From Zootoca vivipara (taxonomy: Eukaryota), in contig NC_083292.1 in NCBI RefSeq assembly GCF_963506605.1, forward strand, positions 35,774,001 to 35,838,000: DNA of 64,000 nt, given 5' to 3'. Position 1 is the first letter of the stretch, and each line of letters starts with the position of its first letter. Shown here piece by piece: positions 4,525-60,100 of the stretch. The notes under the pieces are model-generated. The model was not told the origin of the DNA and did not search any database. It worked only from the letters and a program-made list of their open reading frames with translations. A program made the position numbers and the translations under genes.

Positions 4525-5055
4525 CTATGCACAGATGCTACCACGACGCCCAAACTTCCTTCCAAGGAGTGCCCTCCTCCCAGAGCCCAAACCATAGCCC
4601 CAGCCCCCAGAGCTTCCAAGGAGGCCTGACCCATAGCCCAAGCCCCCAAATCCATAGCCTCCTACTACCCCAGAGCCACCAACAGCACATGGAGTGTTGC
4701 CTCCCACAGCCACAGGCTCACAGCTGGCAGAGAGGATGGGCCCTGGGATGGTCACAACGGAGGCAGGTGGCTGGATCACGACTTCTGCTGGTGGGATCTG
4801 GTTGACGGGTTTAGGGATGATCCCATCTAGGATGCCAAGATTGCTTGCTCTTTCAGCACCTCCATATCCATAGCCCAGGCCTCCAAATCCGAAGCCCTGA
4901 CCTCCCCATCCATAGCCGAGACCTCCCAATCCAGAGCCGAGACCTCCAAATCCAGAGCCGAGACCACCATAGCCAAGACCTCCTGCTGATCCAAACCCAA
5001 CAGTGGGGGTGGAGGCCCAGGATGGGACAGCACAGGATGGACCACAGTCAACCAT
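4525..5055 (-). CDS. Corneous beta-protein (beta-keratin), Gly-rich, gene 1 (176 aa)
   Basis: MVDCGPSCAVPS N-terminus, GGLG[SY]G repeats, beta-core VNQIPPAEVVIQPPASVVTIPGPILSASCEPVAV, basic C-terminus RRGSICA; acceptor tttcag 18 nt before ATG; AATAAA on minus strand at 4307-4312. Confidence 0.95.
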   Translation of the reverse strand: MVDCGPSCAVPSWASTPTVGFGSAGGLGYGGLGSGFGGLGSGLGGLGYGWGGQGFGFGGLGYGYGGAERASNLGILDGIIPKPVNQIPPAEVVIQPPASVVTIPGPILSASCEPVAVGGNTPCAVGGSGVVGGYGFGGLGYGSGLLGSSGGWGYGLGSGRRALLGRKFGRRGSICA

Positions 5056-5912
5056 TGTTGGATGGAGGTGAGTCTGAAACCAAAAACACCAAGGGACAAA
5101 ATTAGCACAGGGGACATCACTTCAATGGACAGTGGGGAGAATATTTCAGACATAATGATCCTGAGGTGTTAGGATATTTTTCCCATTCCTGGTTCACTAA
5201 ACTCAAACCATCTTCCTTTCTCCATGACTGAAAATCAGCTGTCTTTGATAATTCTGAAAACATTAAGCCCTCATGCCTGAATCCTTTTTTGTTCTCTGCT
5301 TTTGTTACTACAGCCCTTCTCTTCATTGTGGATCCCAAATCCAATCCCTGGTAATTTCAGGATGGTCTAGCAATATCCCCTGCTTCAAGGCTTGTAGAAC
5401 AACAGCCAATCTGAGTAGATAAAACTGAACTAGGGGTTCCAGTGGTCTGTCATGGTATAGGACAACTCCCTATGCTCATTCGTGTAGGTTATTTGTTTGG
5501 AACCATGAAGATTAGAACCTTACTTTAATTTTATGGGGAGGACAATTGTTCAGGGGCCGAACATGTGATTTTCATGCAGAACATCCCAAGTTCATTTCCT
5601 GGGATCTGCAGATTGAGCTGGTAAAGATTCTCTTCTTGAAACTCTGGAGAACTACAGCTGGTCAGGGTAGACAAAACTGAGCTAGATAGACTAACACTCT
5701 CAGTATCAGGCAGGTAAATACTTGATTTCATAAGGTACATATAGAAAAGAAGCCAGCCAACAACTTAAGAGTGTAAGGTTCCTGGTGGAAGATCTACCCA
5801 ATTCACAGAGTAATAGAATTTTAGCTTTCTCTTGGAGTTCAGTTACCTGAACCCTCTGGCCACTGCAAGAATCATTCAAATATAACATCATATTTGCGCA
5901 CACTTGACTTAC

Positions 5913-5999
5913 CAAAGTCTCAGAGGAGTAGAAGTGAAGTGAAGGAGATGAAGCCAAAGGAAGCTGTTGGAAGATCTCAGCTAAAGGAGACCTTTTATA
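5913..5999 (-). promoter_or_regulatory. Gene 1 TATA box and non-coding exon 1 (intron 5074-5912, 839 nt)
   Basis: TATAAAA at 5999-5993; donor G|GTAAGT at 5912; matches the known two-exon CBP/EDC architecture. Confidence 0.8.
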
Positions 6000-6387
6000 C
6001 CATTTCATCTACATCTGCTGGTGGTTCCACATCCAGCTTGGATACGCCTCCTTTCCCCTCAGGCTTTAATTAGTAAGCAATTTCTGGAATGCATCATGGC
6101 CCTAATTAAGAAACGAGGCAAAAGTGTTAAGTGTTTTCTCAGTACCTCACTCTCTTCATAGTCATTCTTCCGCAAGACAAAGTTAATAGAAGCTTTTATG
6201 TTCCTCCTGGCAGGCGGATCAAAAGGTGCTTTGTCCCCATTTTTTTCAAAATAGTTGTTGATTTTCTCAGAAGTCTAATTGACCTTTATATCCAGGATTT
6301 TAGTTAGTCATTCTGTGCGCAACACATAGCAGTTTTTGTTTTTGTTTTAACCTCCGCTGTTGGAGGTAAGATTGGGGGAGAAATTTG

Positions 6388-6955
6388 ATCCAGGTTGCAT
6401 TTTCTCGCTTGGACTACTGCAATGCGCTCTACGTTGGGCTACCTTTGAAGGTGACCCGGAAACTACAATTAATCCAGAATGCGGCAGCTAGACTGGTGAC
6501 TGGGAGCAGCCGCCAAGACCACACAACCCCGGTCTTGAAATACCTGCATTGGCTCCCAGTACGTTTCCGAGCACAATTCAAAGTGTTGGTGCTGACCTTT
6601 AAAGCCGTAAACGGCCTCGGTCCAGTATACCTGAAGGAGCATCTCCACCTCCATCGTTCTGCCCGGACACTGAGGTCCAGGGCTGAGGGCCTTCTGGCGG
6701 TTCCCTCGCTGTGAGAAGCCAAGTTACAGGGAACCAGGCAGAGGGCCTTCTCGGTAGTGGCACGCACCCTGGAGAACGCCCTCCCACCAGATGTCAAAAA
6801 GAAAAATAACTACCAGACTTTTAGAGGACATCTGAAGGCAGCCCTGTTTAGGGAGGCTTTTAATGTTTAATCGATTATTTTATTTTATTTTTCTGTTGGA
6901 AGCCGCCCAGAATGGCTGGGGATACCCAGCCAGATGGGCGGGGTATAAATAATAA

Positions 6956-10894: not shown

Positions 10895-11997
10895 TTTCAC
10901 CGGCAGAAGCTAAAACCCAAAAAAGACTGAACATGTCAACAAACTGGTTGAGATATAGGGATATCCTAATGGAAGACGGTGATCAGATAAAGCTAAAACC
11001 ATATGAGGTGTTGAAGAGTAAAGTAAGGGATTGGTTTCAATATTATCAAATTAATGAAATGTTTAAAATGGATAAAAAAGTTGGTTTTCAAATGCAAAAG
11101 TCTAAATTAGAAACAGAATTGTTATATTCCAAAGGTAAAAATTTACCAAAAATGTATAATGTATTCTTGGAATGGCATACAAAGGACAAGCAAACAAAAC
11201 ATGTGATGATAAAATGGGCAAATGATGTGGGGCACAACATCATGGTGGAGGAGTGGGAAAGGTTATGGAAGCAAAATATGAAATTTACCGCGAGAAAATT
11301 TAATGAAAATGATTTATAGATGGTATCTGACTCCAGTAAAGTTAGCTAAGATTTATCATAAACAAGGCAATAAGTGCTGGAAATGTAAAAAGCAAGAAGG
11401 TACTTTCTTCCACATGTGGTGGACATGCCCCCAAGTGAGAGACTTCTGGGAAAAGATTTATAATGAACTGAAAAAAGTGCTGAAAAGCACTTTTGTTAAG
11501 GAACCAGAGGCCTTCTTACTTGGGATAACGGGGGATGATATCCCTAAGAAAGATGTTGTTTTCTTTTTATATGCCACAACAGCAGCAAGAATATTACTGG
11601 CAAAGAATTGGAAGAATGAAGAATTACCAACTGTGGATGAATGGCAGAAGAAATTGATAGAATATATGGAACTGTCTGAGTTGACGGGGAGACTTCGGGA
11701 TCGGAGTGAAGAAGCAGCGGAAGAAGACTGGAAGAAATTTAAAATTTATTTGAAAAATAAGCATGTAATAGATTGATTTAATGGTAGTGAGGGAGATACA
11801 AGGAAGTTGTAGATAATACAAGGGTTTGAAAATAAGCATTGTTAGAAGATATTATAATTAAGAAGTAAGATATAGACTGAGTGTTTAAAAGATAAGATAT
11901 AATAGATATAGTAAAATGATAATATTGAAGCAAATTTAGAGTTGATATAAGATTTAGAACTTACTAAATATGAAATGTAAAGAAGAATTAAAAAAAA
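10895..11997 (+). mobile_element. 5'-truncated L1 with TSD
   Basis: ORF2 C-terminus with CCHC (CWKC..FFHMWWTC); A-tail; TSD gaaagagcttt[g/c]aagat; empty site in paralog at about 26732. Confidence 0.9.
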
Positions 11998-12888: not shown

Positions 12889-13050
12889 TTCTGCCTTTTA
12901 GAGCACAAGCACAAAACTCTGCATTTTACTGATAAGTAAACCTGATTGTATTCACTAATGCTTAGTCCCAGATAAATAGATAAAGGATTGCTGCTTTATT
13001 TTTTCAAATTCACCCCCACCTGGATCGATAATACTTGACTGTGGTCCAGC

Positions 13051-13140
13051 CATAGCTGCCAAGTTATCCCTTTTTTAAAGGGATTTTCCCTTATGCTGAA
13101 TAGGCTTCCTCGCGAGAAAAGGGAAAACTTGGCAGCTATG
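13051..13140. mobile_element. 90-bp hAT MITE
   Basis: TIR catagctgccaagtt/aacttggcagctatg; 8-bp TSD ggtccagc; empty site in gene 4 intron at about 27719. Confidence 0.9.
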
Positions 13141-13408
13141 GGTCCAGCCTGTCAAAAAATGTTTTTGATAGAATTGTTGACATAGCATGCTTTTTTATTT
13201 AGAGCACGATCATGGAAGCAGCCTAATAAGGTATGTGAGTAGTTTCTTGTTTTTCTACAGCGTCTAGCACAGGGGTGTAGTTCTCACTCAGTAGTTATAG
13301 TGAGGTTCCTATAGTCTTGTAACCCTTCTCTGTCGTTCATGCCGGCTGGATCTGATGGGAGTTGAAGTCTGCAACATCAGAAAAGACTACACACTGACTC
13401 CCCCGTTA

Positions 13409-15694
13409 TCTATATATATAAAAATGTAAAAATCGTGAAACTGCGTTTTTTAAGTTTCTCCATAACCGCTTGACCGACCGTCCTGAAATTTTGACACAAC
13501 GTTCCAGGCCACTCCCAGAGCGTTGTTGGGGGCAAAAAAACTCAAATCGCACACCTGTGCAGGTACAGACCTGCTTTTCCACCAACTCAAACAGCGCCCT
13601 CAAGTGGCGTAATACCCTCCTCCACCCCCTCCCTTCCTGTGAAATCTAAGCCACACCCACAAACCAAATGACATCATCATCAACCAAGCAACTGAAATCA
13701 CCAAGGCTGCCATTGTCACAGGACGCAGCACGGCCTCTGTTTATGTAGGCCCCCACTAGGCCCGGGGGGGGGGGATAACCCACAGCAACGCACATGGGGG
13801 CACGGCAAGGGGTTTTTACTTTACAATTTAGCAGCAATACCCCCCCCCCAAATAAATACCATCCTTCAAAACGTCATGAGATATGCTGGTCACGGAGGTG
13901 GGGGGAGAAACAGAATAGATCATGGATCGGGACACGTGGGGCCAGTCACAGGGATTAGCCACAACAATGCACCACACCCACAAACCTGTAAAACAGGGGG
14001 GCTCTGAGGCTCAGGGGGATCTGAAGGGGGTCTATTACCAGACAACCCACAGAGTCAGGCCAGGGCCAAGGAATGGAGATACAGGGCGGAGGCCTCGGGT
14101 CACATTTAAATACTAGTCCAAGCCAAGGCCTCGCTTCTACTTTACAGCCTAAAGACTAGGCCTAGGCTCCATTTTACAGACTAGGCCTCAACTCTATAAC
14201 CCTTTAAATACTATCCCGAATGGAGCCCTGGGGGGAACCCTGGGGGGAGGAGGAGCCCAAATAGGTCATGGGCTGACGTAGGGTGGGGGGAGCAACTGTC
14301 CAACAGCCACTAAAACAGCCATTCCACCCCAAGCCCAACCAAAGCCTGTCCCGGTGGCTGCATTAATAAACGCCTGGCAGCATTAGGCAGTCATTCATCA
14401 TTTCTCCTAACACGCACTTGGGGGCACAGCGAGGGGTTTCCGCTTCATAATTCAGTGACCGTTGTGTCACATGCGAGGCTACGGCGGCCATTTTAAGTAA
14501 GGGCAGTCGTGCCCCTTTTAGCCAAGGCTTTACCGTGTTTCTCCGAAAATAAGACACTGTCTTATATTTATTATTCCTAAAAAAAACCCACATTGGCTTA
14601 TTTTCATGAGATATCTTATTTTTTATTACGCGTCCAGCCTTGCCTCTTCCTTGGGGCCCTCCAGAACTGCGCCTATCACTATGTCTTATTTTTTGGGTAT
14701 GGCTTATATTGCGCAAATGCGTAGAAATCCTGCTATGGCTTATTTTATGGGTATGTCTTATTTTAGGAGAAACAACTGATTGTAAGCCTCTGTGTCTTTT
14801 TTAAAAAAACAACAACCGTGCACTTTTTCTCCCCAGATATTTGCAGTGGCCACTCCCACCCCCGATTTACAATCCCCTACCTTCCCCTTGCCACTTCCTG
14901 GGTTTTTTTATGGAACTGAACAACTCAGGTACTTCAGAACGCGCCTTCTGCTGCCAGGCCCTTGCAGGGCCAGACAGAGGCCTGGGCCAGGTAGATAAGA
15001 TAATGTGGCCCTGTTTTTAACCCTTTTGTTACTTTTTTTCATTTTACTGATTGTGAATATGCAGACCGAGACTCCCTTTTGATTTGGAGGCCCGCGCCAA
15101 GTGGCCCATATGACCCCCCTCCATCTATCTGGGCCTGTCTGTTGCTACGGGGCTATGGGGCTTCGCTATTTGACACCCCCCCCCTCAGGATTTTTAAAGT
15201 AGATCTCTGCCTCCCAGGGCACATCATCACCCCCGATCCTTAATCTAAATATAAAGAAATGCTCGTGATGTGTGCGCAGGGGCCAATGTATGGAGATACA
15301 GGGGGGAGGGGACAACAGAGGGCTCAGACAAAAGTAAATACTGGGAAATGGAACCCAGAAACTGACAGCTCCTTCTCCAAGGCTGGGGGCCAATGTAGGA
15401 AGCTACCGGGGGTAGGGGCCAACACTCCCCAGGGACAACAGAGGGCTCAGACAGAAGTGCATGCTGGGAAATAAAACCCAGAACCTAACAGTTCCTTCTC
15501 CAAGGGTGGGGGCCAAAGTATGGAGATACATGGGGGAGGGGCCAACACTCCCCAGGGACAACAGAGGAAAGGGTATCCTACCGAAACACAGGGATGAGCC
15601 GGGGTGGAGGGAGGAGGGGCAGGATACGTCATGGATCGGGACAGGGTGGGGATCACAGGAAAGAACCACAGCAATGCGTGGCCGGGTCAGCTAG
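13409..15694 (+). mobile_element. Non-autonomous Helitron (2286 bp) in gene 2 intron
   Basis: 5' TC(tatatatataaa), 3' CTAG, inserted between A and T with no TSD, subterminal imperfect hairpin ccacagcaatgcgtgg; empty site in gene 4 intron (about 27986). Confidence 0.88.
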
Positions 15695-15890
15695 TACCTT
15701 ATATCTGAGCTTTTATAATTATTTGGTCTTCTTTGGTTTTCATGTTCCATATTCATCTCAGTTGTTCAATTTCATGCTTTAGATTCTTCTTCAGCCATGG
15801 TTGACTGTGGTCCATTCCCATTGAAGTGATGTACCCCACACTTATTTTCTCCCTTGGTGTTTTTGGTTTCAGACTCACCTCCACCCAACA

Positions 15891-16442
15891 ATGGTAGACT
15901 GTGGTCCATCCTGTGCTGTCCCATCCTGTGCCTCCACCCCCACTGTTGGGTTTGGCTCAGCAGGAGGTCTTGGCTACGGTGGTCTTGGCTATGGACTGGG
16001 AGGTCTCGGCTCTGGATTGGGAGGTCTCGGCTCTGGATGGGGAGGTCAGGGCTTCGGATTTGGAGGACTGGGCTATGGATTTGGAGGACTGGGCTATGGA
16101 TATGGAGGTGCTGAAAGAGCAAGCAATCTTGGCATCCTAGATGGGATCATCCCTAAACCCGTCAACCAGATCCCACCAGCAGAAGTCGTGATCCAGCCAC
16201 CTGCCTCCGTTGTGACCATCCCAGGGCCCATCCTGTCTGCCAGCTGTGAGCCTGTGGCTGTTGGAGGCAACACTCCATGTGCTGTTGGTGGCTCTGGGGT
16301 AGTAGGAGGCTATGGATTTGGGGGCTTGGGCTATGGGTCTGGCCTCCTTGGAAGCTCTGGGGCCTGGGGCTATGGTTTGGGCTCTGGGAGGAGGGCACTC
16401 CTTGGAAGGAAGTTTGGGCGTCGTGGTAGCATCTGTGCATAG
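15891..16442 (+). CDS. Corneous beta-protein gene 2 (183 aa)
   Basis: Same core box and Gly repeats; acceptor AG 15871-15872; AATAAA 16655-16660. Confidence 0.95.
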   Translation: MVDCGPSCAVPSCASTPTVGFGSAGGLGYGGLGYGLGGLGSGLGGLGSGWGGQGFGFGGLGYGFGGLGYGYGGAERASNLGILDGIIPKPVNQIPPAEVVIQPPASVVTIPGPILSASCEPVAVGGNTPCAVGGSGVVGGYGFGGLGYGSGLLGSSGAWGYGLGSGRRALLGRKFGRRGSICA

Positions 16443-18384
16443 GCCAATTAAACCCGAGAAGTATATCCTGAACTGATATCCACGGAGCTTGATACAGCTG
16501 TATTGGCCATGGTTCAGAAGAGCTGAATTCAAGCAATCACTCCTGGAATTCATCCTTCATTCTTTGCTTTAGAGTCCAGAAGAAAAAGATCTTTCTACAC
16601 CGATTGTCTTCTTTGCCCCTTATAAAATTTCAATGCTTTTTCTTTGACCTTTTCAATAAAGCTTGTTCTGCATTCTGATCACCTGTTTGTCTTGATTTTT
16701 AAATGTAAAGCCTCAGTTCCACATAGCAAGGTGTCTGAAGCAGTTTTTGGCCAAACTAAAATCAGTGCATTTGCAGGACATCTTTGTCTCTGGCCCCCTG
16801 AATGGTTTAGTTCCATGTGGTTAGAATAAGGTACATTCGCCTTGAGAGAATTATCATTTCCCCCTTTTTCAAAACAAGTGCTGGGTCCCCTTTCAGAGTG
16901 CCTCAAACCATTATTTATTCAGAGAGCAACAGTCATAATAGCTGGATAATCTTTTGTAGTTTTGCAAAATTTGCATATGTACATCGTGTGGAATGTATTG
17001 CGGAATGTAGCTTTTGTAATCAATATGTTACAAGACTTTGGACAATAACATATTTTTTGATGGGAGATAATGTAGTCAAATGGTGCAGGATTACCCAGCC
17101 TCTCAGTCAGATACTGTATTTTGATACAGTTTTAAATTATTGCATACACGAGTTAAAAAAAAATTAAGCACATTTAAACCTTGTCTTCATTTATTGATTT
17201 GTAATCTAAATTTAAAGCCGTCCAAATTAGTGGAAATCGCCACATCTTCTGGAAATGTGGAAAGTCAGGTTGGTAACACCTAGTGCCCTAGCTCCCCAGT
17301 TAAAATGGCAAAGGCTGTAGAGATCTCCCCCAAAGCCCTCCCAAAAGGTTAAAGTCTGTAAAATGAGGTTTGAGAAAGCAGCAAACGTTGACACTGAGTT
17401 AATGGCGGAAGTTTTAATGAATAACAGCACATACTGGGCATCTCTAGACACAGGTACAGGAATCACTTTATTAAGAGAAGATCTAGATACTTCCACAAAG
17501 ATGTTGCCTCACAAAACAACAAAGGTCACAAAGGGCATCCAGATTAGCTCCCAGTGTCTGAGGCCGCCTGGGACAGATCTGACTCCCACTAGCCTAATAG
17601 GGGAGCCAGTAGGTAAGGACCCTCTGAGAGAGGTCGGGGCAGGGGCCCACACCGTTGACCTCATCCCTCCGATGCTCCCCGAGACTCATGCATGGCCCTG
17701 GCCCCTAACGGGGATAAACCTACAAACATGTAGAGCCCCGGGATTCCTTTAACGGAATACCCCTAAAGGCATCAGCAACCATGAGGGAAAGGCCCAGCCA
17801 AAATCCATACCCCTCCACCATCCAATTTGAAGCAATGCCTAACCGCCAACCTTACAAGTTGTGACTTATTGCTACGCAGTAGGAAGGCGCCCCCCCCCCC
17901 CGGCACCAGCCAATCAGCCAAGTGGGCAAATTCCTACCAGGCCCCTGATCCAAAACAGGTGACCCCATGACAGGCACAGCAAGGTCAATGCAAAGAACAT
18001 CTAAAATTAGTGGAGGGCAGGCAGGAGATTTGTTGCGAGCAGCAAAGTGGAACTAAAAGCTGCTCGCTAAGCACATATAAGGCTAAGACTGTCAATCTAT
18101 CATTTGCTACATGCTAAACTCCCCAGCAACAGCCAACCAATTGGTGTGCCAACCAACCACACATGTGGCTATCCAAACTGAACCGCCCAACCAACCCTGG
18201 GATGTCTTGTTAACCCTTCCGCAACCCATGTTCTCCTTTAAGGGGAGAACCTGCTCTGTCCTGAGATGCTGGCTGCATCGGTCATTTCCTTTCCCTCACT
18301 TGTTATCTCGCAGCAGCCATCTCAGCCGTCAGGCCTTGCGGGACCCTGCTCCCCCCTGGCGGCTCATTAGAAGAGCTGGTCGAG

Positions 18385-22291: not shown

Positions 22292-22843
22292 CTAATTGCA
22301 CACACTGCCACGACGCCCCAGGAGGGATCTTCTCCCAAAGAGTCCACCCCTCCTAAGACCAAATTGGGAACCTCCAAGGAAGCCACCAAAATTGCTTCCA
22401 AGGAGACCTGACCCGTAGCCATAGCCTCCTACAAGCCCAGAACCACCAACGGCACATGGAGTGTTGCCTCCAACAGCCACAGGCTCACAGCTGGCAGAGA
22501 GGATGGGCCCTGGGATGGTCACAACGGAGGCAGGTGGCTGGATCACGACTTCTGCTGGTGGGATCTGGTTGACGGGTTTAGGGATGATCCCATCTAGGAT
22601 GCCAAGATTGCTTGCTCTTTCAGCACCTCCATATCCATAGCCCAGGCCACCAAATCCGAAGCCCTGACCTCCCCATCCAGAGCCGAGACCTCCCAATCCA
22701 GAGCCGAGACCTCCAAATCCAGAGCCGAGACCTCCCAATCCAGAGCCGAGACCACCATAGCCAAGACCTCCTGCTGATCCAAACCCAACAGTGGGGGTTG
22801 AGGCCCAGGATGGGACAGCACAGGATGGACCACAGTCAACCAT
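22292..22843 (-). CDS. Corneous beta-protein gene 3 (183 aa, alternative C-terminus RRSLLGRRGSVCN)
   Basis: Core box intact; acceptor at 22862-22863 (minus); ATTAAA on minus strand at 21993-21998. Confidence 0.95.
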   Translation of the reverse strand: MVDCGPSCAVPSWASTPTVGFGSAGGLGYGGLGSGLGGLGSGFGGLGSGLGGLGSGWGGQGFGFGGLGYGYGGAERASNLGILDGIIPKPVNQIPPAEVVIQPPASVVTIPGPILSASCEPVAVGGNTPCAVGGSGLVGGYGYGSGLLGSNFGGFLGGSQFGLRRGGLFGRRSLLGRRGSVCN

Positions 22844-23700
22844 TGTTGGATGGAGGTGAGTCTGAAACCAAAAACACCAAGGGACAAAATTAGCACAGGG
22901 TACATCACTTCAATGGACAGTGGGGAGAATATTTCAGACATAATGATCCTGAGGTATTAGGATAATTTTCCCATTCCTGGTTCACTAAACTCAAACCATC
23001 TTCCTTTCTCCATGACTGAAAATCAGCTGTCTTTGATAATTCTGAAAACATTAAGCCCTCATGCCTGAATCCTTTATTGTTCTCTGCTTTTGTTACTACA
23101 GCCCTTCTTTTCATTGTGGATCCCAAATCCAATCCCTGGTAATTTCAGCATGGTCTAGGAATATCCCCTGCCTCAAGGCTTGTAGAACAACAGCCAATCT
23201 GAGTAGATAAAACTGAACTAGGGGTTCCAATGGTCTGTCATGGTATAGGACAATTCCCTATGCTCATTTGTGTAGGTTATTTGTTTGGAACCATGAAGAT
23301 TAGAACCTTACTTTAATTTTATGGGGAGGACAATTGTTCAGGGGCCGAACATGTGATTTTCATGCAGAACATCCCAAGTTCATTTCCTGGGATCTGCAGA
23401 TTGAGCTGGTAAAGATTCTCTTCTTGAAACTCTGGAGAACTACAGCTGGTCAGGGTAGACAAAACTGAGCTAGATAGACTAACACTCTCAGTATCAGGCA
23501 GGTAAATACTTGATTTCATAAGGTACATATAGAAAAGAAGCCAGCCAACAACTTAAGAGTGTAAGGTTCCTGGTGGAAGATCTACCCAATTCACAGAGTA
23601 ATAGAATTTTAGCTTTCTCTTGGAGTTCAGTTACCTGAACCCTCTGGCCACTGCAAGAATCATTCAAATATAACGTCATATTTGCGCACACTTGACTTAC

Positions 23701-23787
23701 CAAAGTCTCAGAGGAGTAGAAGTGAAGTGAAGGAGATGAAGCCAAAGGAAGCTGTTGGAAGATCTCAGCTAAAGGAGACCTTTTATA
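23701..23787 (-). promoter_or_regulatory. Gene 3 TATA box and non-coding exon 1 (intron 22862-23700, 839 nt)
   Basis: TATAAAA 23787-23781; donor GTAAGT at 23700; paralogous to the gene 1 promoter. Confidence 0.8.
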
Positions 23788-26365: not shown

Positions 26366-26985
26366 GCAGAAGCTGTGTTGGGTGTTTGGCTTCCAAAAAA
26401 ACATTCAAAAACCAGAACACTTACTTCCAGGTTTTTTGTTGTTTGGGAGATGATTTGTTTGATAACTAAGTCATTTGAGAACCAAGGTAGCACTGTAATG
26501 GGTTACAAAATGAATACATTGGAGTAAACTGTGACTACAATGCCTGCATATCTTAAAGAAAAGAAGGCACAACAATGTATGATATTAAAGAGAATTGCAC
26601 TTCAGAAATGTGTAATTCAATACAACTGTGTGCTGATGGATTTTCATGAGGACACTGATAATGGAGATCTCTGGGAATCCGGTATGCATATGCAAAATAT
26701 TTGATGATGTCCTAGAGTCCCTCAAGCTGATGAAAGAGCTTTGAAGATCTCTATCTGTTCCCTCTGGGTGCATCTGGTTTCAAGCATCAGACTCGAAGTC
26801 AGCAAAATTAAAAGGAAGGGAGGGGGAATGGTGTTGAGACTATTAGTCTTTCATTATTGCAACCACTAAATGTTGTGACCTTTTGTGCTTAGTGAAGTAA
26901 TTTTGCACATTAAATTGTCAACAACAAAATAAAAGATTAGTCAGAAGAGGCAGTCCCTTGGTCACTGGGGCGGCTTGCAGAACTG

Positions 26986-27067
26986 TATAAAAGCTCGAAG
27001 TTCTCCCAGTTTCTCCCACAGCTTCACCTGACTCTCCTGTCTTCACTACATCTCACCAAAGCAGCAG
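26986..27067 (+). promoter_or_regulatory. Gene 4 TATA box and non-coding exon 1 (intron 27068-28164)
   Basis: TATAAAA 26986-26992; donor CAG|GTAAGC at 27068. Confidence 0.8.
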
Positions 27068-27522
27068 GTAAGCCCATTTCCTTGGGGTGATATTTCCAAG
27101 CTTGTCGTAGGTTCACATTGAAGTAGGGCCAGATGGCTCTTCCAATGAGAGCAGGGATGGGTATCCTGTGGTCCTTGCAATGTTGCTTCCATCATCCTTG
27201 TCCATTGGGAATGCTGGCTGAGAGGACTTGCGATCCTGCAACAACCGCAGGGCCACAGCTTCCCCATCCCTCCTTCACACCCTGCAGGTTCATTAAATAA
27301 GTCACCCCTGATTCTTTGGGCATATATCTAGAACCGGGAAGGAAAACCAGGGGCTTTGTAGATGTTTATGAACTACAGCAGATGGGAGCTAAAGTCTGGT
27401 TGTGCCATTTAGCAAACACAGCAGGAGAAGATCTCCATGGTAATGTCATCTATGCCTGTTAAATATAATTGTGATATTTAGAAGGTGGCACCAGCTTTCT
27501 ATTCTCTCTCTTCCTAAATGTC

Positions 27523-27566
<44 letters not shown>

Positions 27567-28182
27567 CTGCCTTTTAGAGCACAAGCACAAAACTCTGCAT
27601 TTTACTGATAAGTAAACCTGATTGTATTCACTAATGCTTAATCCCAGATGAATAGATAAATGATTGCTGCTTTATTTTTTCATATTCACCCCCACCTGGA
27701 TCGATAATACTTGACTGTGGTCCAGCCTGTCAAAAAATGTTTTTGATAGAATTGTTGACATAACATGCTTTTTTATTCAGACCACGATCATGGAAGCAGC
27801 CTAATAAGGTATGTGAGTATTTTCTTGTTTTTCTACAGCGTCTACCACAGGAGTGTAGTTCTCACTCAGTAGTTATAGTGAGGTTCCTATAGTCTTGTAA
27901 CCCTTCTCTGTCGTTCATGCCGGCTGGATCTGATGGGAGTTGAAGTCTGCAACATCAGAAAAGACTACACACTGACTCCCCCAATATACCTTATATCTGA
28001 GCTTTTATAATTATTTGGTCTTCTTTGGTTTTCATGTTCCATATTCATCTCAGTTGTTCAATTTCATGCTTTAGATTCTTCTTCAGCCATGGTTGACTGT
28101 GATCCATCCCCATTGAAGTGATGTACCCCACACTTATGTTCTCCCTTGGTGTTTTTGCTTTCAGACTCACCTCCATCCAACA

Positions 28183-28734
28183 ATGGTTGACTGTGGTCCA
28201 TCCTGCGCCGTCCCATCCTGCGCTTCCACCCCCACTGTTGGGTTTGGCTCAGCAGGAGGTCTTGGCTACGGTGGTCTTGGCTATGGACTGGGAGGTCTCG
28301 GCTCTGGATTTGGAGGTCTCGGCTCTGGATTGGGAGGTCTCGGCTCTGGATGGGGAGGTCAGGGCTTCGGATTTGGAGGCCTGGGCTATGGATATGGAGG
28401 TGCTGAAAGAGCAAGCAATCTTGGCATCCTAGATGGGATCATCCCTAAACCCGTCAACCAGATCCCACCAGCAGAGGTTGTGATCCAGCCACCTGCCTGC
28501 ATTGTGACCATCCCAGGGGCCATCCTCTCTGCCAGCTGTGAGCCTGTGGCTGTGGGAGGCAACACTCCATGTGCTGTTGGTGGCTCTGGGGTAGTAGGAG
28601 GCTATGGACTTGGGGGCTTGGGCTATGGGTCTGGCCTTCTTGGAAGCTCTGGGGGCTGGGGCTATGGTTTGGGCTCCGGGAGGAGGGCACTCCTTGGAAG
28701 GAAGTTTGGGCGTCGTGGTAGCATCTGTGCATAG
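28183..28734 (+). CDS. Corneous beta-protein gene 4 (183 aa)
   Basis: Core box variant QPPACIVTIPGAIL; acceptor AG 28163-28164; AATAAA 28947-28952. Confidence 0.95.
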   Translation: MVDCGPSCAVPSCASTPTVGFGSAGGLGYGGLGYGLGGLGSGFGGLGSGLGGLGSGWGGQGFGFGGLGYGYGGAERASNLGILDGIIPKPVNQIPPAEVVIQPPACIVTIPGAILSASCEPVAVGGNTPCAVGGSGVVGGYGLGGLGYGSGLLGSSGGWGYGLGSGRRALLGRKFGRRGSICA

Positions 28735-29827
28735 GCCAATTAAACCCGAGAAGTATATCCTGAACTGATATCCACGGAGCTTGATACAGCTGTATTGGCC
28801 ATGGTTCAGAAGAGCTGAATTCAAGCAATCACTCCTGGAATTCATCCTCCATTCTTTGCTTTAGAGTCCAGAAGAAAAAGATCCTTCTACACCGATTGTC
28901 TTCTTTGCCCCTTATAAAATTTCAATGCTTTTTCTTTGACCTTTTCAATAAAGCTTGTTCTGCATTCTGATCACCTGTTTGTCTTGATGTTTAAATGTAA
29001 AGCCTCAGTTCCGCATAGCAAGGTGTCTGAAGCAGTTTTTGGCCAAACTAAAACCAGTGCATTTGCAGGACATCTTTCTCTCTGGCCCCCTGAATGGTTT
29101 AGTTCTATGTGGTTAGAATAAGGTACATTCGCCTCGAGAGAATTATCATTTCCCCCTTTTTCAAAACAAGTGCTGGGTCCCCTTTCAGAGTGCCTCAAAC
29201 CATTATTTATTCAGGGAGCAACAGTCATAATAGCTGGATAATCTTTTGTAGTTTTGCAACATTTGCATATGTACATCGTGTGGAATGTATTGCGGAATGT
29301 AGCTTTTGTAATCAATATGTTACAAGACTTTGGACAATAACATATTTTTTGATACGAGATAATGTAGTCAAATGGTGCAGGATTACCCAGCCTCTCAGTC
29401 AGATACTGTATTTTGATACAGTTTTAAATTATTGCATACACGAGTTAAAAAAAAATTAAGCACATTTAAACCTTGACTTCATTTATTGTTTTGTAATCTG
29501 CATTTAAAGCCGTCCAAATTAGTAGCAATCGCCACATCTTCTGGAAAGGTGGAAAGTCAGGTCGGTAACACCTAGTGCCCTAGCTCCCCAGTTAAAATGG
29601 CAAAAGCTGTAGACATCTCCCCCCAAAGCCCTCCCAAGAGGTTAAACTCTGTAAAATGAGGTTTGAGAAAGCTGCAAACTTTGACACTGAGTTAATGGAG
29701 GAAGTTTTAATGAATAACAGCACATACTGGGCATCTCTAGACACAGGTACAGGAATCACTTTATTAAGAGAAGATCTAGATACTTCCACAAAGATGTTGC
29801 CTCACAACATCCAGATTAGCTCCCAGA

Positions 29828-35489: not shown

Positions 35490-36026
35490 TTACCACACAT
35501 TACACACATTACCACGGCCTCCCAGCAGGGATCTCCTTCCAAAGAGCCCACCCCTTCTCAGACCAAACTGGGAACTTCCAAGGAAGCCACCAAAATTGCT
35601 TCCAAGGAGACCTGACCCGTAGCCATAGCCTCCTACCAGCCCAGAGCCACCAACAGCACATGGAGTGTTGCCTCCAACAGCCACGGGCTCACAGCTGGCA
35701 GAGAGGATGGGCCCTGGGATGGTCAGGACGGAGGCAGGTGGCTGGATCACGACCTCTGCTGGTGGGATCTGGTTGATGCAGGATGGGGCAACTCCTGCCA
35801 GGACTCCAAGATTGGCTGCTCTTTCAGCACCTCCATATCCATAGCCCAGGCCTCCAAATCCGAAGCCCTGACCTCCCCATCCAGAGCCGAGACCTCCAAA
35901 TCCAGAGCCGAGACCTCCAAATCCAGAGCCGAGACCACCATAGCCAAGACCTCCTGCTGATCCAAACCCAACAGTGGGGGTGGACGCACAGGATGGGACA
36001 GCACAGGATGGACCACAGTCAACCAT
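35490..36026 (-). CDS. Corneous beta-protein gene 5 (178 aa, C-terminus GRGNVCNVW)
   Basis: True start is the MVDCG ATG at 36026 (the ORF-track extension to 36128 is intronic); acceptor 36045-36046; ATTAAA on minus strand 35257-35262. Confidence 0.95.
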   Translation of the reverse strand: MVDCGPSCAVPSCASTPTVGFGSAGGLGYGGLGSGFGGLGSGFGGLGSGWGGQGFGFGGLGYGYGGAERAANLGVLAGVAPSCINQIPPAEVVIQPPASVLTIPGPILSASCEPVAVGGNTPCAVGGSGLVGGYGYGSGLLGSNFGGFLGSSQFGLRRGGLFGRRSLLGGRGNVCNVW

Positions 36027-39600: not shown

Positions 39601-40521
39601 ATGGCAGGCGAGGGGCCGGGTCCAGGTTCAGGAGCTAGACCAAGGAGGAAAGCATCGGTTTCGCCAACCTTTGAAGATGAGGTGCTTAAATTGCTAGGTT
39701 CCCTTAAGGAGGGGCAGGATAAATTACAAGAGACACAAGATAAACATACAGAGGAATTCAAGGATTTAAAAGAGAAGATTGGCACTTTGAAACAAGATGT
39801 TCAACAGGTGAAGACGGAAGTGGCAGGAGTGGAAACCAGAGTGGCACATTTGGAAAACATAAGAGTGCAAGACTTGGAAAGCCAGCAATATCAAACGCAG
39901 GTGCAAATTGCGTTTTTACAGTTAAGGCAGAGACAGATGAACTTGAGGATAAGGAATTTTCCGGAGATAGAAAAAGAGGACTTAAAAGCTGCTTTAATCC
40001 AGGAATTCATGACGACTTGGAATTTAACAAGAGAGGAAGTAGAACCAACAATTGTAAAGGCATACAGATTTGGAGCAAAATCAAAGAAGAAAGATTCCCA
40101 ATTTATTAGTGATTGTATGGTGGTTTTTCAGACAAAGGAGCAGAGAGATAAAATTTTGGGTCTACACTACCAGAGAAAGTTAAAGGTGCAAGGAAAACAG
40201 GTTATTTTTTTCAAGGATATTCCGAAATTCTTCCTGTCGCTCAGGGAGAGATACACTGATTTAACGAACCTTTTGACAAAGAAAGGCATTCTCTTTCGCT
40301 GGGAATTTCCGGAGGGAATTTTCTTTAAATTTCAACAGAAGAAAGTGTGGATTAAATCAGTGGAAGATAAGTTAAGATTTCTAGAGCAACACGCAATAGA
40401 CTTTGAGAGAGAAAAAGAATCAGATACAGACCCACAGGTGAAATCACCACCTTTGTTTGATCCGAATCTGCTGGTAGGAGCGGGACCAGGAGCAGCACCA
40501 TTTTCATTATTTTCAAATTAA
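39601..40521 (+). CDS. L1 ORF1p (306 aa)
   Basis: Heptad coiled coil, then NLRIRNFPE RRM-like start and C-terminal IFFKD motif; 6 nt upstream of ORF2. Confidence 0.88.
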   Translation: MAGEGPGPGSGARPRRKASVSPTFEDEVLKLLGSLKEGQDKLQETQDKHTEEFKDLKEKIGTLKQDVQQVKTEVAGVETRVAHLENIRVQDLESQQYQTQVQIAFLQLRQRQMNLRIRNFPEIEKEDLKAALIQEFMTTWNLTREEVEPTIVKAYRFGAKSKKKDSQFISDCMVVFQTKEQRDKILGLHYQRKLKVQGKQVIFFKDIPKFFLSLRERYTDLTNLLTKKGILFRWEFPEGIFFKFQQKKVWIKSVEDKLRFLEQHAIDFEREKESDTDPQVKSPPLFDPNLLVGAGPGAAPFSLFSN

Positions 40522-40527
40522 GCAGTC

Positions 40528-43500
40528 ATGATGGCGTTGAGAATACTTACATGGAATGTTCACGGTTTTAACTCTAAGGTGAAAAGAAATCAAATCTGCC
40601 ACGTGTTAAGAAAACAAAATTTGGATGTGATATGTCTGCAGGAAACACATGTGACAAGATCTCACAGAAAAATTCTGCAAAATAAAAATTTGGGAAATGA
40701 TTTTATATCATCGGACAGAGTTAAGAAAAGAGGAGTAGTGATTTATGTCAAGGATAAATTGGAAGCCAAGTTGTTATTTAAAGATGATGAAGGAAGATAT
40801 GTTGCAGTGGAAATAAAAGCGCAAGGCGAAAAATTTTTGGTTATTGGAATTTATGCCCCAAATGATGCTAAATCTGATTTCTTCCAAAAGTTGCATGAAA
40901 GACTGCTGGATTATTTGGATTACAAAATAATTCTGATGGGAGATTTTAATGGAGTTGTATCGACGTTGATGGATAGGTCACAAAGACAAAGAATAACAAA
41001 TGAAGGCAGACTCCCTAAGACTTTTTTTGAGTTGGTAGAAAATTTTGACATGATAGATACATGGAGGTTGAAAAATCCATTAGAAAAAGAGTTTACGTTT
41101 TTCTCAGATGTGCATCAAACAGGTTCCAGATTGGACTATATTTGGACTACAAGAGATTTATCTCCCAAAATAATAAAGGCGGAAATTTGCCCAAAGACTT
41201 TCTCTGATCATAATGCAGTTTTAATGGAACTGAAATTATTTCTGCAGGGTTCGTTTAGATGGAGAATGAATGATGCCCTATTAAGGAATGAACAGATAGT
41301 GCAAAAAGCTCAGAAAACCCTTAAAGACTATTTTGAATTAAATTCAAATAATGAAACGGACACAAGGGTTATATGGGATGCCAGCAAGGCGGTGATGAGA
41401 GGTTTTTTAATTCAACAAAATACATTAAAAAGGAAAACCCAAGAGGCAAAGAAAGAGGGTATATTAAATAGATTAAAAGAAGAAGAGAAGAGATTAAGAG
41501 CGAAGCCAAAAGATCAACAGATACAAAAAGAAATAAAGGCATTACAGACACAGTATTCTCAATTAATAAATTTGGAAATTGAGTGGAAGGTAAAGATGAT
41601 GAGGCAAAGAACCTTTGAATCAGCAAATAAGTGTGGAAAATTGTTGGCATGGCAAATGAAAAAGAGATTAAAGCAAAGCACAATAAGTAAGATAATACAG
41701 GAGGATAAGATAATAGAGAAACCTGCAGAAATTAGGAAATGTTTTCAGAAATATTATAAAGAATTATATAAGAAGGATAAAGAAGATTTGGGAGAATTGG
41801 ATCAATTTGTGACCAAATATGGATTACAAAAAATCTCATATCAAAATAAAATTATACTTAACAGCAGGATAACAAGGAAGGAAATCGAAACAGCAATTAA
41901 TCAAATGCAATTGGGCAAAGCACCAGGACCAGACGGATTGACTGCAAAATATTATAAGACATTAAAGGACTGGCTAATACAGCCTTTGATGGAAGTTTGC
42001 AACAAAATATTGGAAGGGGATCGGGCACCAGAGTCGTGGAAAGACGCCTTCATCACATTGTTGCCAAAGGAAGGGGCGGACAGGACTCAAGTTAAGAATT
42101 ACCGTCCCATTTCCTTATTGAATGTGGATTACAAAATTTTTGCGAATATTATGGCATCGAGATTGAAAAGAATCCTTAAGGACTTGATACACCATGATCA
42201 AGCAGGTTTCTTACCAACAAGGCATATGAAGGATAATATACGGAACATTGTAGATATATTAGAGTTTCTGCAGTCCAAAAAGAATACACATGCGACCTTG
42301 ATGTTTATAGATGCAGAGAAGGCCTTCGATAATATTTCATGGGATTTTATGAAGAAAAATATGGAAGGTATGGGCGTGGGTTCAGGCTTTATGAATGGTC
42401 TGAATGCATTATATTATGAGCAAAAAGCGAAAATTATAGTCAACAATGTGGTGGCGGATGAAATCAGGATTGAAAAAGGAACTAGACAAGGGTGCCCGCT
42501 CTCCCCACTGTTATTTATAACGGTCCTGGAGGTTTTGCTGAATATGATTAGAAGGGAAGAAGAGATTAGAGGAGTAGTGGTGGGGTCAAAGCAATACAAA
42601 CTAAAAGCCTTTGCGGATGATTTAGTGCTTACTTTAGAGGACCCAGAAACCAGCGTAGTTAAAGCGCTGGAAATAATTCAGGAGTTTGGACATGTTGCGG
42701 GGTTTAAACTGAACAAGACTAAAATGAAGGTTTTAGAAAAAAATTTGACGTTAGAGGAAAGAAATAAGATACAAGAGGCCACAGGCTTGAACTTTGTAAA
42801 AAAGGTGAAGTACCTGGGTGTAAACATGACAGCAAAGAACTTGACTTTGTATAAAGACAATTATGAGAAGATATGGAATGAGATAAAAAGGGATCTTGAA
42901 ACATGGTCTAGATTAAAATTGTCATTGCTAGGTAGAATTTCAGTTATTAAGATGAATGTATTGCCAAGGATGTTGTTTTTATTCCAAGTCTTACCTATAA
43001 TTGATAATGTGAAATGCTTCAAGGAATGGCAAAAGATGTTATCGAAATTTATCTGGCAGGGGAAAAAACCCAGAATTAAGTTTAAGATTTTAACAGATAC
43101 TAAAGAAAGGGGGGGCTTCTCCTTGCCAGACTTGAAATTATATTTTGAAGCCGCGGCTTTATGTTGGATGAAGGAATGGTTTTTGCTAGAAAATACGGAT
43201 GTATTAGACCTGGAAGGCTTTGATAATGTGTATGGATGGCATGCATATTTATGGTATGACAAAGCAAAGGTTTATAAAGGTTTCAAGACCCATATAATCA
43301 GGAAAGCATTGTTAAATGTTTGGTTGAGATATAAGGATCTATTAGAGAGTAAAACACCCAGGTGGCTTTCACCACTGGAGGCCAAAGCCTTTAAAAGGCG
43401 TAATATGGAAGCCAGATGGCCAAAATATAAGGATATTTTAGTACAGGAAGGTGATCAATATAAACTTAAACCATATGACCAGTTGAAAGATATATTATCT

Positions 43501-47510: not shown

Positions 47511-48022
47511 TTCTCATTCCTACCCTGCTAGAAAATGGTTTATTGTGTTCCAGCCTGTTAAAAATTGTTTTTGATAGTATTGTAGACATAGCATGCTTTT
47601 TTAAAAAAAAATAAAAAAAATTCAGAACACCATCACTGAATCATCCTGCTAAGGTATAGGAGCATTTTCTTGTTTTTCTACAGCGTCTACCACAGGGGTG
47701 TTGTTCTCACTCTGTAGTTATAGCAAGGTTCCTATAGTCTCATAACCCTTCTATGTTGTCCATGCTGGCTGGGTCTGATGGGAGTTGAAGTCTGCAACAT
47801 CAGAAAAGACTACACACTGACTAGCCCCTCATGTATCCGAGCTTTTATAATTATTTGGTCCTCTTTGGTTTTCATGCTCCATATTCAACTCATTTCTTCA
47901 ACTGTATACTTTAGATTCTTCTTCTGCCATGGTTGACTGTGGTCCATCCCCATTGAAGTGATGTATCCCACACTTATTTTCTCCCTTGGTGTTTTTGCTT
48001 TCAGACTCACCTCCATCCAGCA

Positions 48023-48898: not shown

Positions 48899-48940
<42 letters not shown>

Positions 48941-53692: not shown

Positions 53693-53861
53693 ACACAGTG
53701 TAGATTTTGTAATTAATGTGCTGCAAGCTTCGGACAATAATATTTTTGTTCATGTTACATGATGCACTGTGCATGTATGGGAATGTTGTCAAAATATACC
53801 ATATTATCTAGCAATGATGGCATTTTATGTTGGCTACCAGCCAGATATTGTATTTTTCATA

Positions 53862-60067: not shown

Positions 60068-60100
<33 letters not shown>

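What the first reader, a model, noticed from the sequence alone, without database searches (positions are those of the whole stretch)
15775..15893. All plus-strand CBP genes carry a remnant exon-2 start: a second acceptor plus a Kozak-strong 10-codon uORF
Seen: 90 nt upstream of the working acceptor, genes 2, 4 and 6 each have tttAG|attcttcttc(a/t)gccATGG followed by a copy of the protein's own first codons. These read MVDCGPFPLK* (15797-15829), MVDCDPSPLK* (28089-28121) and MVDCGPSPLK* (47929-47961). After codon 7 the sequence switches, at a TCC microhomology, into the intron end of the minus-strand genes (tccccattgaagtgatg..., compare gene 7 at 61041-61052). Minus-strand genes lack this element. 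Inference: the plus-strand class is a fusion in which an ancestral gene lost its coding exon after about 7 codons and acquired the intron end and exon 2 of the other class. The upstream AG, the gccATGG context and the stop are kept in all three copies, although the gene 6 intron has otherwise diverged visibly. Choice of 3' splice site could therefore act as a translation switch: the upstream AG gives a uORF-bearing mRNA and the downstream AG gives a clean 5'UTR. I know of no description of this in beta-keratin genes but cannot search the literature.
Basis: partly seen in the sequence, partly recalled or inferred. Interest (0 to 1): 0.78.

Follow-up and report, generated by a model that had tools for sequence, protein, structure and literature searches.

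The report
Fossil exon start in lizard keratin-gene introns
Three lizard scale-protein genes carry, inside their leader intron, a leftover splice site and start codon from an older gene they were fused with; it looks like a harmless recombination scar, and no data yet show that it regulates anything.

Summary
All 3 plus-strand corneous beta-protein (CBP, beta-keratin) genes carry a relic 94 nt before the true ATG, and 0 of 4 minus-strand genes do. The relic reads tttAG|attcttcttc(a/t)gccATGG plus 7 codons of the protein's own start, then switches into the last 55 nt of intron shared by all seven genes.

Homology between the two gene classes starts 73-76 nt before the ATG in every plus/minus pair. 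A single chimeric origin for the plus class is therefore well supported. I also found a second, older and more decayed relic of the same kind about 380 nt further upstream in all three plus introns. Its ATG is lost in two copies and it has no AG. It shows that such scars arise repeatedly here and then decay.

The proposed splice-controlled translation switch is not supported, and it was not fairly tested. Keeping AG, ATG and stop in three copies is expected by chance (p about 0.3-0.5). The relic is not significantly better conserved than flanking intron (p 0.15-0.29). The downstream acceptor has the stronger signals. The one informative RNA run gave zero depth over the 90-nt segment, but only about 5 reads reached the exon-2 start, and at least 3 came from minus-class genes.

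The parts
15781..15817 (+). Relic 1 of gene 2. AG at 15781-15782, diverged leader at 15783-15796, ATG plus 7 codons at 15797-15817. The short ORF runs to 15829.
28073..28109 (+). Relic 1 of gene 4. AG at 28073-28074, leader at 28075-28088, ATG plus 7 codons at 28089-28109. The short ORF runs to 28121. Its stop overlaps a second ATG (TGATG) that opens a long out-of-frame ORF across the main ATG.
47913..47949 (+). Relic 1 of gene 6. AG at 47913-47914, leader at 47915-47928, ATG plus 7 codons at 47929-47949. The short ORF runs to 47961.
28110..28164 (+). Intron end shared by all seven genes. It has a CTTAT branch candidate 28 nt before the AG, then a T-rich tract and cAG. The same block lies at 15818-15872 and 47950-48004, and on the minus strand before genes 1, 3, 5 and 7.
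   Evidence: RNA reads that join gene 1/3 exon 1 to this acceptor type are.
28165..28734 (+). Gene 4 exon 2: an 18-nt leader and a CDS of 183 aa (CBP, Pfam PF02422). Gene 2 exon 2 is 15873-16442 and gene 6 exon 2 is 48005-48532.
27009..27067 (+). Gene 4 non-coding exon 1. The 5' end is not mapped. TATAAAAG lies at about 26986 and the GT donor at 27068. The gene 2 donor is at 12334 and the gene 6 donor at 46799.
   Evidence: Depth is 0.62 in the exon 1 bin of run X11.
27707..27730 (+). Relic 2 of gene 4: ATACTTGACTGTGGTCCAGCCTGT (ILDCGPAC). It is preceded by a leader-like stretch and by cat where the acceptor cag would be.
13031..13152 (+). Relic 2 of gene 2. It is split after GGTCCAGCC by an 89-nt palindromic insertion (13052-13140) with a 9-nt target duplication.
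47535..47558 (+). Relic 2 of gene 6: ATGGTTTATTGTGTTCCAGCCTGT (MVYCVPAC*).
22862..23786 (-). Minus-class 5' end of gene 3. TATAAAAG lies at about 23786, exon 1 ends at 23701, and the intron is 23700-22862 (839 nt). It contains no relic. Gene 1 has the same layout, with exon 1 ending at 5913 and intron 5912-5074.
   Evidence: Three reads with this exon 1 attached are.

Best explanation
The element is a recombination scar. An ancestral CBP gene kept its promoter, non-coding exon 1, intron, acceptor, leader and first 7 codons. After the letters TCC it was joined by an illegitimate, microhomology-type event to the last 55 nt of intron plus exon 2 of a gene of the minus-strand type.

The divergent gene pair (one minus, one plus) was then duplicated in tandem, so all three plus genes inherited the scar. 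Later gene conversion or inverted duplication homogenised everything from about -75 onward between the classes. The edge of that homogenised block is set by where homology ends.

In the mature mRNA the relic is most likely removed with the intron. The downstream acceptor is the one all seven genes share and it has the stronger branch and pyrimidine signals. The short ORF is a by-product of a start-codon copy running into intron sequence. The same process happened once before in this lineage and left relic 2, which is now decaying.

Shown: the anatomy, the common breakpoint, absence from minus genes, the second relic, and use of the shared acceptor type by genes 1/3. Inferred: the order of events, the mechanism of joining, and that the plus genes use the downstream AG.
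For: - Homology between classes starts at gene-oriented position 4925-4928, that is 73-76 nt before the ATG, in all plus/minus pairs. Plus genes align with each other much further upstream.
- The relic aligns to true exon-2 starts. It has AG in register, 14-16 of 26 aligned leader letters, and 20-21 of 24 CDS letters.
- The element is present in 3 of 3 plus genes and 0 of 4 minus genes.
- Similarity of CDS and 3' flank cuts across the classes. Genes 1, 2 and 4 are about 96% alike over 1.7 kb, and genes 6 and 7 are 94.7% alike over 1.1 kb. Upstream parts are class-specific.
- Relic 2 is present in all 3 plus introns. It matches 21 of 24 true-start letters when set against gene 7, and 20 of 30 leader letters in gene 4. 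Its ATG is lost in genes 2 and 4, there is no AG, and one copy was hit by a transposon.
- The three relic-1 copies each carry one private change. The two changes that fall in codons both alter the peptide.
- The relic is not significantly more conserved than its flank: 35 of 37 letters against 293 of 337 (p 0.29), or against 73 of 87 (p 0.15).
- Downstream acceptor: CTTAT 28 nt before the AG, pyrimidine run of 9-11, C at -3. Upstream acceptor: pyrimidine run of 4-7, T at -3, and in genes 2 and 4 another AG 21 nt before it.
- In run X11, depth is 0 in all intron bins, including 28030-28089 and 28090-28149, against 4.07 in 28150-28209 and 0.62 on plus exon 1. Three reads join gene 1/3 exon 1 to the shared acceptor.
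Against: - Identity between gene 6 and genes 2/4 rises from about 84% just before the relic (72% in the last 25 nt) to about 95% from the relic's AG onward. The rise starts at the relic, not at the -75 junction. A neutral scar outside the reach of minus-to-plus conversion would be expected to look like the left flank. With 37 letters this is not significant, and a plus-to-plus conversion tract would also explain it.
- AG, gccATGG and an in-frame stop are intact in all three copies.
- The RNA test has almost no power for plus genes. About 5 reads reach the exon-2 start, at least 3 of them are minus-class, and at most about one read touches plus exon 1. Which acceptor the plus genes use is therefore inferred, not seen.
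- Two breaks within the first 8 codons of a 550-nt CDS are unlikely under random breakage (about 0.002). This needs either survivorship, where only short relics are tolerated, or a hot spot.
Confidence: 0.7

Rival explanations
1. Splice-controlled translation switch. Plus genes use either AG. The upstream AG adds 90 nt carrying a strong-context 10-codon uORF. Its stop overlaps a second AUG (UGAUG) that opens a long out-of-frame ORF across the main AUG, so this isoform is poorly translated. The ratio of the two isoforms would be regulated, for example over the shedding cycle.
For: - AG, gccATGG and the stop are intact in 3 of 3 copies.
- A YTNAY branch candidate lies 22-27 nt before the upstream AG.
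- The 90-nt segment holds the only ATGs of either leader form. Exon 1 and the 18-nt leader have none.
- Identity between genes 6 and 2/4 is about 95% from the relic AG onward, against about 84% just before it.
Against: - No read covers the 90-nt segment in the one run with signal, though the depth is tiny.
- Retention of the signals is expected by chance (0.18-0.48).
- The conservation difference is not significant.
- The peptide is not conserved.
- The older relic 2 of the same kind has decayed.
- The upstream pyrimidine tract is weak.
- No paper was found describing such control in CBP genes.
Confidence: 0.12
2. The upstream AG is the main acceptor of plus genes. Their mRNAs would always carry the two uORFs, and the plus class would be translationally handicapped or on the way to silencing.
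For: - The upstream AG is the first candidate acceptor met after the donor, and no read directly shows a plus exon 1 joined to the downstream AG as a listed joint.
- Few reads in X11 carry gene-4-specific letters. At 28476, 190 of 197 reads show another letter.
- Gene 4 has three changes in the otherwise invariant core box.
Against: - Depth is 0 in 28075-28149 while the plus exon 1 bin has 0.62. If that read were joined to 28075 it would have given depth there.
- All three plus CDS are intact and 169-183 aa long.
- The downstream site has the better signals and is proven for genes 1/3.
Confidence: 0.08
3. Not one event. The same junction arose, or was copied into each plus gene separately, by gene conversion anchored on the conserved start codons. 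On this reading the relic says little about a single ancestral fusion.
For: Identity between genes 6 and 2/4 steps up at each relic: about 71% before relic 2, 85-89% between the relics, and about 95% from relic 1 on. This is what spread of the 3' block by conversion with its 5' anchor in the conserved first codons would give.
Against: - The junction letters are the same in all three copies.
- The original non-homologous join must still have happened once.
- This modifies the history rather than the nature of the scar.
Confidence: 0.1

Closest known systems
Single-coding-exon EDC genes, including corneous beta-proteins, of squamates (PMC11431283, passages of the Introduction, Results and Discussion read)
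   Same: The layout matches: a TATA-box promoter, a non-coding exon 1, one intron in the leader, and the whole CDS in exon 2. The genes are clustered paralogues, and the paper suggests gene conversion keeps them alike. Pfam PF02422 is hit by genes 3, 4 and 6. The nearest proteins are lacertid CBPs.
   Different: In the passages I saw, the paper does not describe relics of exon-2 starts, chimeric 5' ends or alternative acceptors. It states that gene structures remain to be validated.
Chimeric genes made by recombination or deletion between neighbouring paralogues, such as haemoglobin Lepore and hybrid opsin genes (recalled, no call)
   Same: The 5' part, including the promoter, comes from one paralogue and the 3' part from another. 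The product is a working gene under a different promoter.
   Different: Those textbook cases arise by homologous unequal crossing-over and leave no scar. Here the join is non-homologous (a 3-letter overlap). It links a coding position to an intron position and leaves a fossil acceptor and start codon inside the intron. It happened twice in series.
Leader-intron alternative splicing that adds or removes uORFs (general knowledge; PMC3315328 seen only as a search listing and the start of its abstract)
   Same: If the upstream AG were used, the mRNA would gain a strong-context uORF plus an overlapping out-of-frame ORF. This is the classic way such isoforms are silenced.
   Different: Use of the upstream AG is not shown here. 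No conservation beyond chance is shown either.
Pseudoexons or exon remnants in introns (general knowledge, recalled)
   Same: The sequence has splice-site-like and coding-like features, sits in an intron, and is normally ignored by the spliceosome because a stronger neighbouring site wins.
   Different: This one's origin can be traced exactly to a paralogous exon start, and it is multiplied by tandem duplication.

Membership tests
Corneous beta-protein (beta-keratin) gene of the epidermal differentiation complex | Protein with the beta-keratin core box (Pfam PF02422) | tested here: met
   genes 4, 6 and 3 score 30.6, 41.7 and 36.2 bits against a cutoff of 25; 69 of the 71 hits listed carry PF02422, and the top hits are lacertid CBPs.
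Corneous beta-protein (beta-keratin) gene of the epidermal differentiation complex | TATA-box promoter, non-coding exon 1, one leader intron, and the whole CDS in exon 2 | tested here: met
   By sequence. For genes 1/3, 3 reads join exon 1 to the acceptor. For plus genes there is only 0.62 depth on exon 1 and zero intron depth.
Chimeric (fusion) gene scar | The relic is homologous to a real exon-2 start (acceptor, leader, ATG and codons) | tested here: met
   20-21 of 24 CDS letters, 14-16 of 26 aligned leader letters, and AG in register; 0.00 matches expected by chance.
Chimeric (fusion) gene scar | One common breakpoint, with class-specific sequence on one side and shared sequence on the other | tested here: met
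   all plus/minus alignments begin 73-76 nt before the ATG.
Chimeric (fusion) gene scar | Absent from the donor-type (minus) genes | tested here: met
   0 of 4 minus genes in this window. The rest of the genome was not examined.
uORF-bearing alternative leader isoform with a regulatory role | The upstream AG is used in mRNA | tested here: inconclusive
   depth is 0 over 28075-28149 in X11. Only about 5 reads reach the exon-2 start and most are from minus-class paralogues. X10 and X12 had no reads at all, and X1 contigs cover only 28295-28749.
uORF-bearing alternative leader isoform with a regulatory role | An upstream AUG in good context with a defined ORF in that isoform | tested here: met
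   gccATGG, 10 codons, a stop 59 nt before the main ATG, and a second ATG overlapping that stop.
uORF-bearing alternative leader isoform with a regulatory role | Signals conserved beyond the neutral expectation | tested here: not met
   Fisher p 0.15 and 0.29; neutral retention probability 0.18-0.48. Only three paralogues were available. Orthologues could not be fetched.
uORF-bearing alternative leader isoform with a regulatory role | The uORF lowers translation of the main ORF | not testable with these tools
   Needs reporter assays or ribosome profiling.

The most novel reading that the evidence does not exclude
The plus-class CBP genes have turned a fusion scar into a control point. Choice between two acceptors 90 nt apart decides whether the mRNA carries a strong 10-codon uORF. 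That uORF's UGA overlaps a second AUG (UGAUG) leading into a long out-of-frame ORF over the main start. One promoter class of scale proteins could therefore be transcribed early and translated only when splicing shifts, for example at a given stage of the shedding cycle. The stacked fossil starts would further mean that CBP clusters evolve by repeated capture of new promoters and leaders at a break-prone site just after the conserved first codons.
Probability: 0.1. Interest if true: 0.6.

Novelty: new member of a known kind. Interest (0 to 1): 0.3.

Why it matters
The scar gives a dated, base-precise record of how paralogues in a reptile skin-protein cluster exchange promoters and coding parts. 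There were two successive non-homologous joins just after the conserved first codons. After them came tandem duplication of a divergent gene pair and conversion between genes in opposite orientation.

That is useful for annotating these clusters. Gene finders may pick the fossil AG or ATG by mistake. It also helps in understanding concerted evolution of CBP genes.

If the fossil acceptor were used, it would be a neat case of a recombination by-product recruited for translational control. Nothing here shows that.

Tried and rejected

**Metagenome scan.** A scan for the junction found nothing, as expected for an animal sequence.

**RNA.** I laid X1, X10, X11 and X12 on 26950-28749, which is gene 4 whole. 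The length was chosen so that one 60-nt bin, 28090-28149, falls between the two AGs. X10 and X12 gave 0 reads. X1 gave contigs on the CDS only. X11 gave 263 reads, of which 226 were 95-99% alike and so came from paralogues. No joint reached the listing threshold of 3 reads.

**Earlier findings of the scan.** Nothing near the place, and no note with the words I tried.

**Literature.**
- 0 papers for beta-keratin + lizard + uORF.
- 0 for beta-keratin + Podarcis + intron + untranslated.
- 0 for corneous beta + alternative splicing + squamate.
- The wall-lizard EDC paper, read by passages, does not mention relics.
- Older subscription papers on lizard beta-keratin gene structure are outside the library, so 'not in print' holds only for these searches.

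**Rejected ideas.**
- A simple 94-nt tandem duplication. The relic's leader and the intron before it differ from the true ones.
- An N-terminal extension of the protein. The relic ATG is 94 nt upstream, so it is out of frame, and it meets a stop after 10 codons.
- Chance similarity of relic 2. There were 0 hits at up to 7 mismatches of 27 in 20 shuffles, and the site is orthologous in all three plus introns.

**A weak point that I kept.** In genes 1 and 3, the 5 letters just before the shared block (ACTGT) equal relic letters if 9 nt were deleted. Genes 5 and 7 lack this. I take it for chance.

**Joined models.** The CDS lies in one exon and was searched alone.

Full report
**What the window is.** The window holds seven intact genes for corneous beta-proteins (CBPs, formerly beta-keratins) in alternating orientation:

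| Gene | Coordinates | Strand |
|---|---|---|
| 1 | 4525-5055 | - |
| 2 | 15891-16442 | + |
| 3 | 22292-22843 | - |
| 4 | 28183-28734 | + |
| 5 | 35490-36026 | - |
| 6 | 48023-48532 | + |
| 7 | 60466-60975 | - |

Genes 3, 4 and 6 hit Pfam PF02422 above its cutoff. The nearest proteins in the word search are CBPs of the lacertids Podarcis muralis, Zootoca vivipara and Lacerta agilis. The known layout of such genes is a TATA-box promoter, a non-coding exon 1, one intron in the leader and a single coding exon. This is stated in the wall-lizard EDC paper (PMC11431283, passages read).

Before each plus-strand gene, 94 nt upstream of the true ATG, lies tttAG|attcttcttc(a/t)gccATGG. It is followed by the first 7 codons of the protein. 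The sequence then continues as CCATTGAAGTGATG..., the last 55 nt of intron that all seven genes share.
- The short ORFs read MVDCGPFPLK*, MVDCDPSPLK* and MVDCGPSPLK* at the stated coordinates.
- The acceptor-plus-leader motif occurs 3 times, only before genes 2, 4 and 6, with 0.00 matches expected.
- None of the 4 minus-strand genes has the element.

**It is a fusion scar.** In an all-against-all comparison of the seven loci, every plus/minus alignment starts 73-76 nt before the ATG. Genes of the same class align much further upstream.

Aligned with true exon-2 starts, the relic has its AG in register. Its leader is diverged (14-16 of 26 aligned letters) and 20-21 of its 24 CDS letters match. 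The break joins the CDS letters ...CCATCC to the intron letters ...TCC|CCATTG, an overlap of three letters.

The minus-type intron runs on without a break, and the plus-type sequence stops inside a coding sequence. The plus class is therefore the chimera. It has its own promoter, exon 1, intron and first 7 codons, followed by the intron end and exon 2 of a minus-type gene.

The repeat unit of the cluster is a divergent pair of one minus and one plus gene, so the join predates the tandem duplications.

Downstream of -75, similarity cuts across the classes. Genes 1, 2 and 4 are about 96% alike over 1.7 kb, and genes 6 and 7 are 94.7% alike over 1.1 kb plus 0.6 kb. The upstream parts stay class-specific. 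This points to later conversion or inverted duplication whose 5' edge is set by the end of homology.

**A second, older scar.** The start-of-CDS search also hit 13031 and 27707. In all three plus introns, about 380 nt before relic 1, there is a further copy of the exon-2 start:
- Genes 2 and 4 have ATACTTGACTGTGGTCCAGCCTGT (ILDCGPAC).
- Gene 6 has ATGGTTTATTGTGTTCCAGCCTGT (MVYCVPAC*).

This copy is preceded by a leader-like stretch matching 20 of 30 letters in gene 4. Where the acceptor cag would be, it has cat. After codon 8 it switches to unrelated intron sequence.

Its ATG is lost in genes 2 and 4. In gene 2 it is split by an 89-nt palindromic insertion with a 9-nt target duplication. The same kind of join therefore happened twice in this lineage, and the older scar is decaying as neutral DNA does.

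Identity between gene 6 and gene 4 rises in steps. It is about 71-74% from the promoter to relic 2, 85-89% between the relics, and 94-96% from relic 1 onward. This suggests that the 3' blocks were later passed between plus genes, with the conserved first codons serving as the 5' anchor. That is inference.

Two breaks within the first 8 codons would be unlikely by chance. I think survivorship is the simplest reason. Joins inside the intron leave nothing recognisable, and joins deeper in the CDS would leave a long competing pseudo-exon.

Four points weaken it:
- The stop lies in the shared block, which minus-gene introns also have, so it is not independent evidence.
- The tree length taken from the flanking intron is about 0.145 changes per site. 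With it, the chance that 5, 8 or 12 critical letters stay unchanged in all three copies is 0.48, 0.31 and 0.18.
- The relic differs by 2 of 37 letters in each pairwise comparison. Against the flank this gives Fisher p 0.29 (337 letters) or 0.15 (87 letters).
- Both changes that fall within the relic's codons change the amino acid.

The splice signals favour the downstream site:

| Feature | Downstream AG | Upstream AG |
|---|---|---|
| Branch candidate | CTTAT, 28 nt before the AG | YTNAY candidate, 22-27 nt before the AG |
| Longest pyrimidine run | 9-11 | 4-7 |
| Letter at -3 | C | T |
| Other | none | In genes 2 and 4, another AG 21 nt before it |

If the upstream AG were used, the extra 90 nt would bring in the only ATGs of the leader. 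These are the strong-context 10-codon ORF and a second ATG that overlaps its stop (TGATG). The second ATG opens a long out-of-frame ORF across the main start. Such an isoform would be poorly translated. I judged this exon by exon and built no joined mRNA model.

**RNA evidence.** No run on record as RNA held the stretch. I laid one probable-RNA contig set (X1) and three 2026 raw-read RNA runs (X10-X12) on gene 4.
- X10 and X12 gave no reads.
- X1 contigs cover only 28295-28749.
- X11 gave 263 reads, of which 226 were only 95-99% alike. These are mostly paralogue reads piling up on the conserved core box.

In X11, depth is 0 in every intron bin, including 28030-28089 and 28090-28149. It is 4.07 in 28150-28209 and 0.62 in the exon 1 bin.

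Three reads end at 28164 with foreign letters that match exactly the end of exon 1 of genes 1 and 3 (5914-5943 and 23702-23731 on the minus strand). This proves the minus-class gene model (839-nt intron) and the use of the shared acceptor type.

For the plus class there is at most about one read on exon 1. It gave no depth in the 90-nt segment, so by inference it joins the downstream site. This result does not contradict the scar reading, but it is far too thin to exclude minor or stage-specific use of the upstream AG.

**What could not be done.** Orthologous lacertid loci would be the best test of constraint. A metagenome scan for the junction found nothing. Supplements of the wall-lizard paper were closed.

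**Literature.** Searches found no description of such relics, or of uORF or alternative-acceptor control, in lizard CBP genes. Older subscription papers on lizard beta-keratin gene structure are outside the searched library.

**Verdict.** The anatomy is real and its origin as a chimeric join is well supported (about 0.9). The element is most likely a silent scar removed with the intron (about 0.7 for the whole reading). The translation-switch idea remains possible (about 0.1) and is directly testable with skin RNA-seq. The kind of thing is known: chimeric paralogues, exon remnants and concerted evolution in EDC clusters. The stacked pair of fossil starts is a tidy new example. Interest is 0.3.

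Noticed in passing
window 27707-27730, 13031-13152, 47535-47558: There is a second, older fossil of a CBP exon-2 start (leader-like stretch, ATG region and 8 codons) in all three plus-gene introns. The ATG is lost in genes 2 and 4 and no acceptor AG is left. Identity between genes 6 and 4 steps up at this point.
   Followed up: yes
window 13052-13140: An 89-nt palindromic element sits inside relic 2 of gene 2 only. Its arms are about 25 nt and 96% complementary, and it is flanked by a 9-nt direct repeat GGTCCAGCC. It looks like a recent MITE-type insertion.
   Followed up: partly
window 28119-28123 (also 15827-15831 and 47959-47963): The stop of the 10-codon ORF overlaps a second ATG (TGATG). 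In the upstream-AG isoform this ATG would open a long out-of-frame ORF running across the main start codon. The same ORF shows up in the ORF list for minus genes, for example 22594-22941.
   Followed up: partly
window 28459-28530 (gene 4 core box): Gene 4 alone has three amino-acid changes in the otherwise invariant core box (PPACIVTIPGA against PPASVVTIPGP). Almost no X11 reads carry its specific letters; at 28476, 190 of 197 reads show the other letter. Gene 4 may be weakly expressed or drifting.
   Followed up: no
window 4525-6600 / 15818-17500 / 28110-29800, and 47948-49700 / 59250-61050: There are large inverted repeats between genes of opposite strand. Each runs from 75 nt before the ATG to 1.1-1.2 kb past the stop. 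Genes 1/2/4 are about 96% alike and genes 6/7 are 94.7% alike. Gene 1 is a mosaic: its upstream part and 5' CDS resemble gene 3, and its 3' CDS and flank resemble genes 2 and 4.
   Followed up: partly
window 39601-44166 (+): A LINE-like element with two long open ORFs (306 aa and 1212 aa) lies between genes 5 and 6. It accounts for the wide spacing there. A shorter related fragment is at 10933-11776. It was not classified.
   Followed up: no
window 13400-15700: The gene 2 intron is about 2.3 kb longer than that of gene 4, owing to an insertion just before the intron end that precedes relic 1. Its content was not examined.
   Followed up: no
window 27900-27960 and 47745-47805: A SINE-like piece (…gggagttgaagtctgcaacatc…) lies between the two relics and is 89-98% identical between genes 4 and 6. 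The name is recalled, not tested.
   Followed up: no
window 53759-54988: A G+C-rich stretch has long overlapping ORFs on both strands and repeated peptide motifs. It is probably a tandem repeat.
   Followed up: no
window 5125-5131 and 22915-22921 (minus strand): In genes 1 and 3, the 5 letters just 5' of the shared intron block are ACTGT. These are the same as relic letters if 9 nt were deleted. Genes 5 and 7 do not have them. Probably chance.
   Followed up: no
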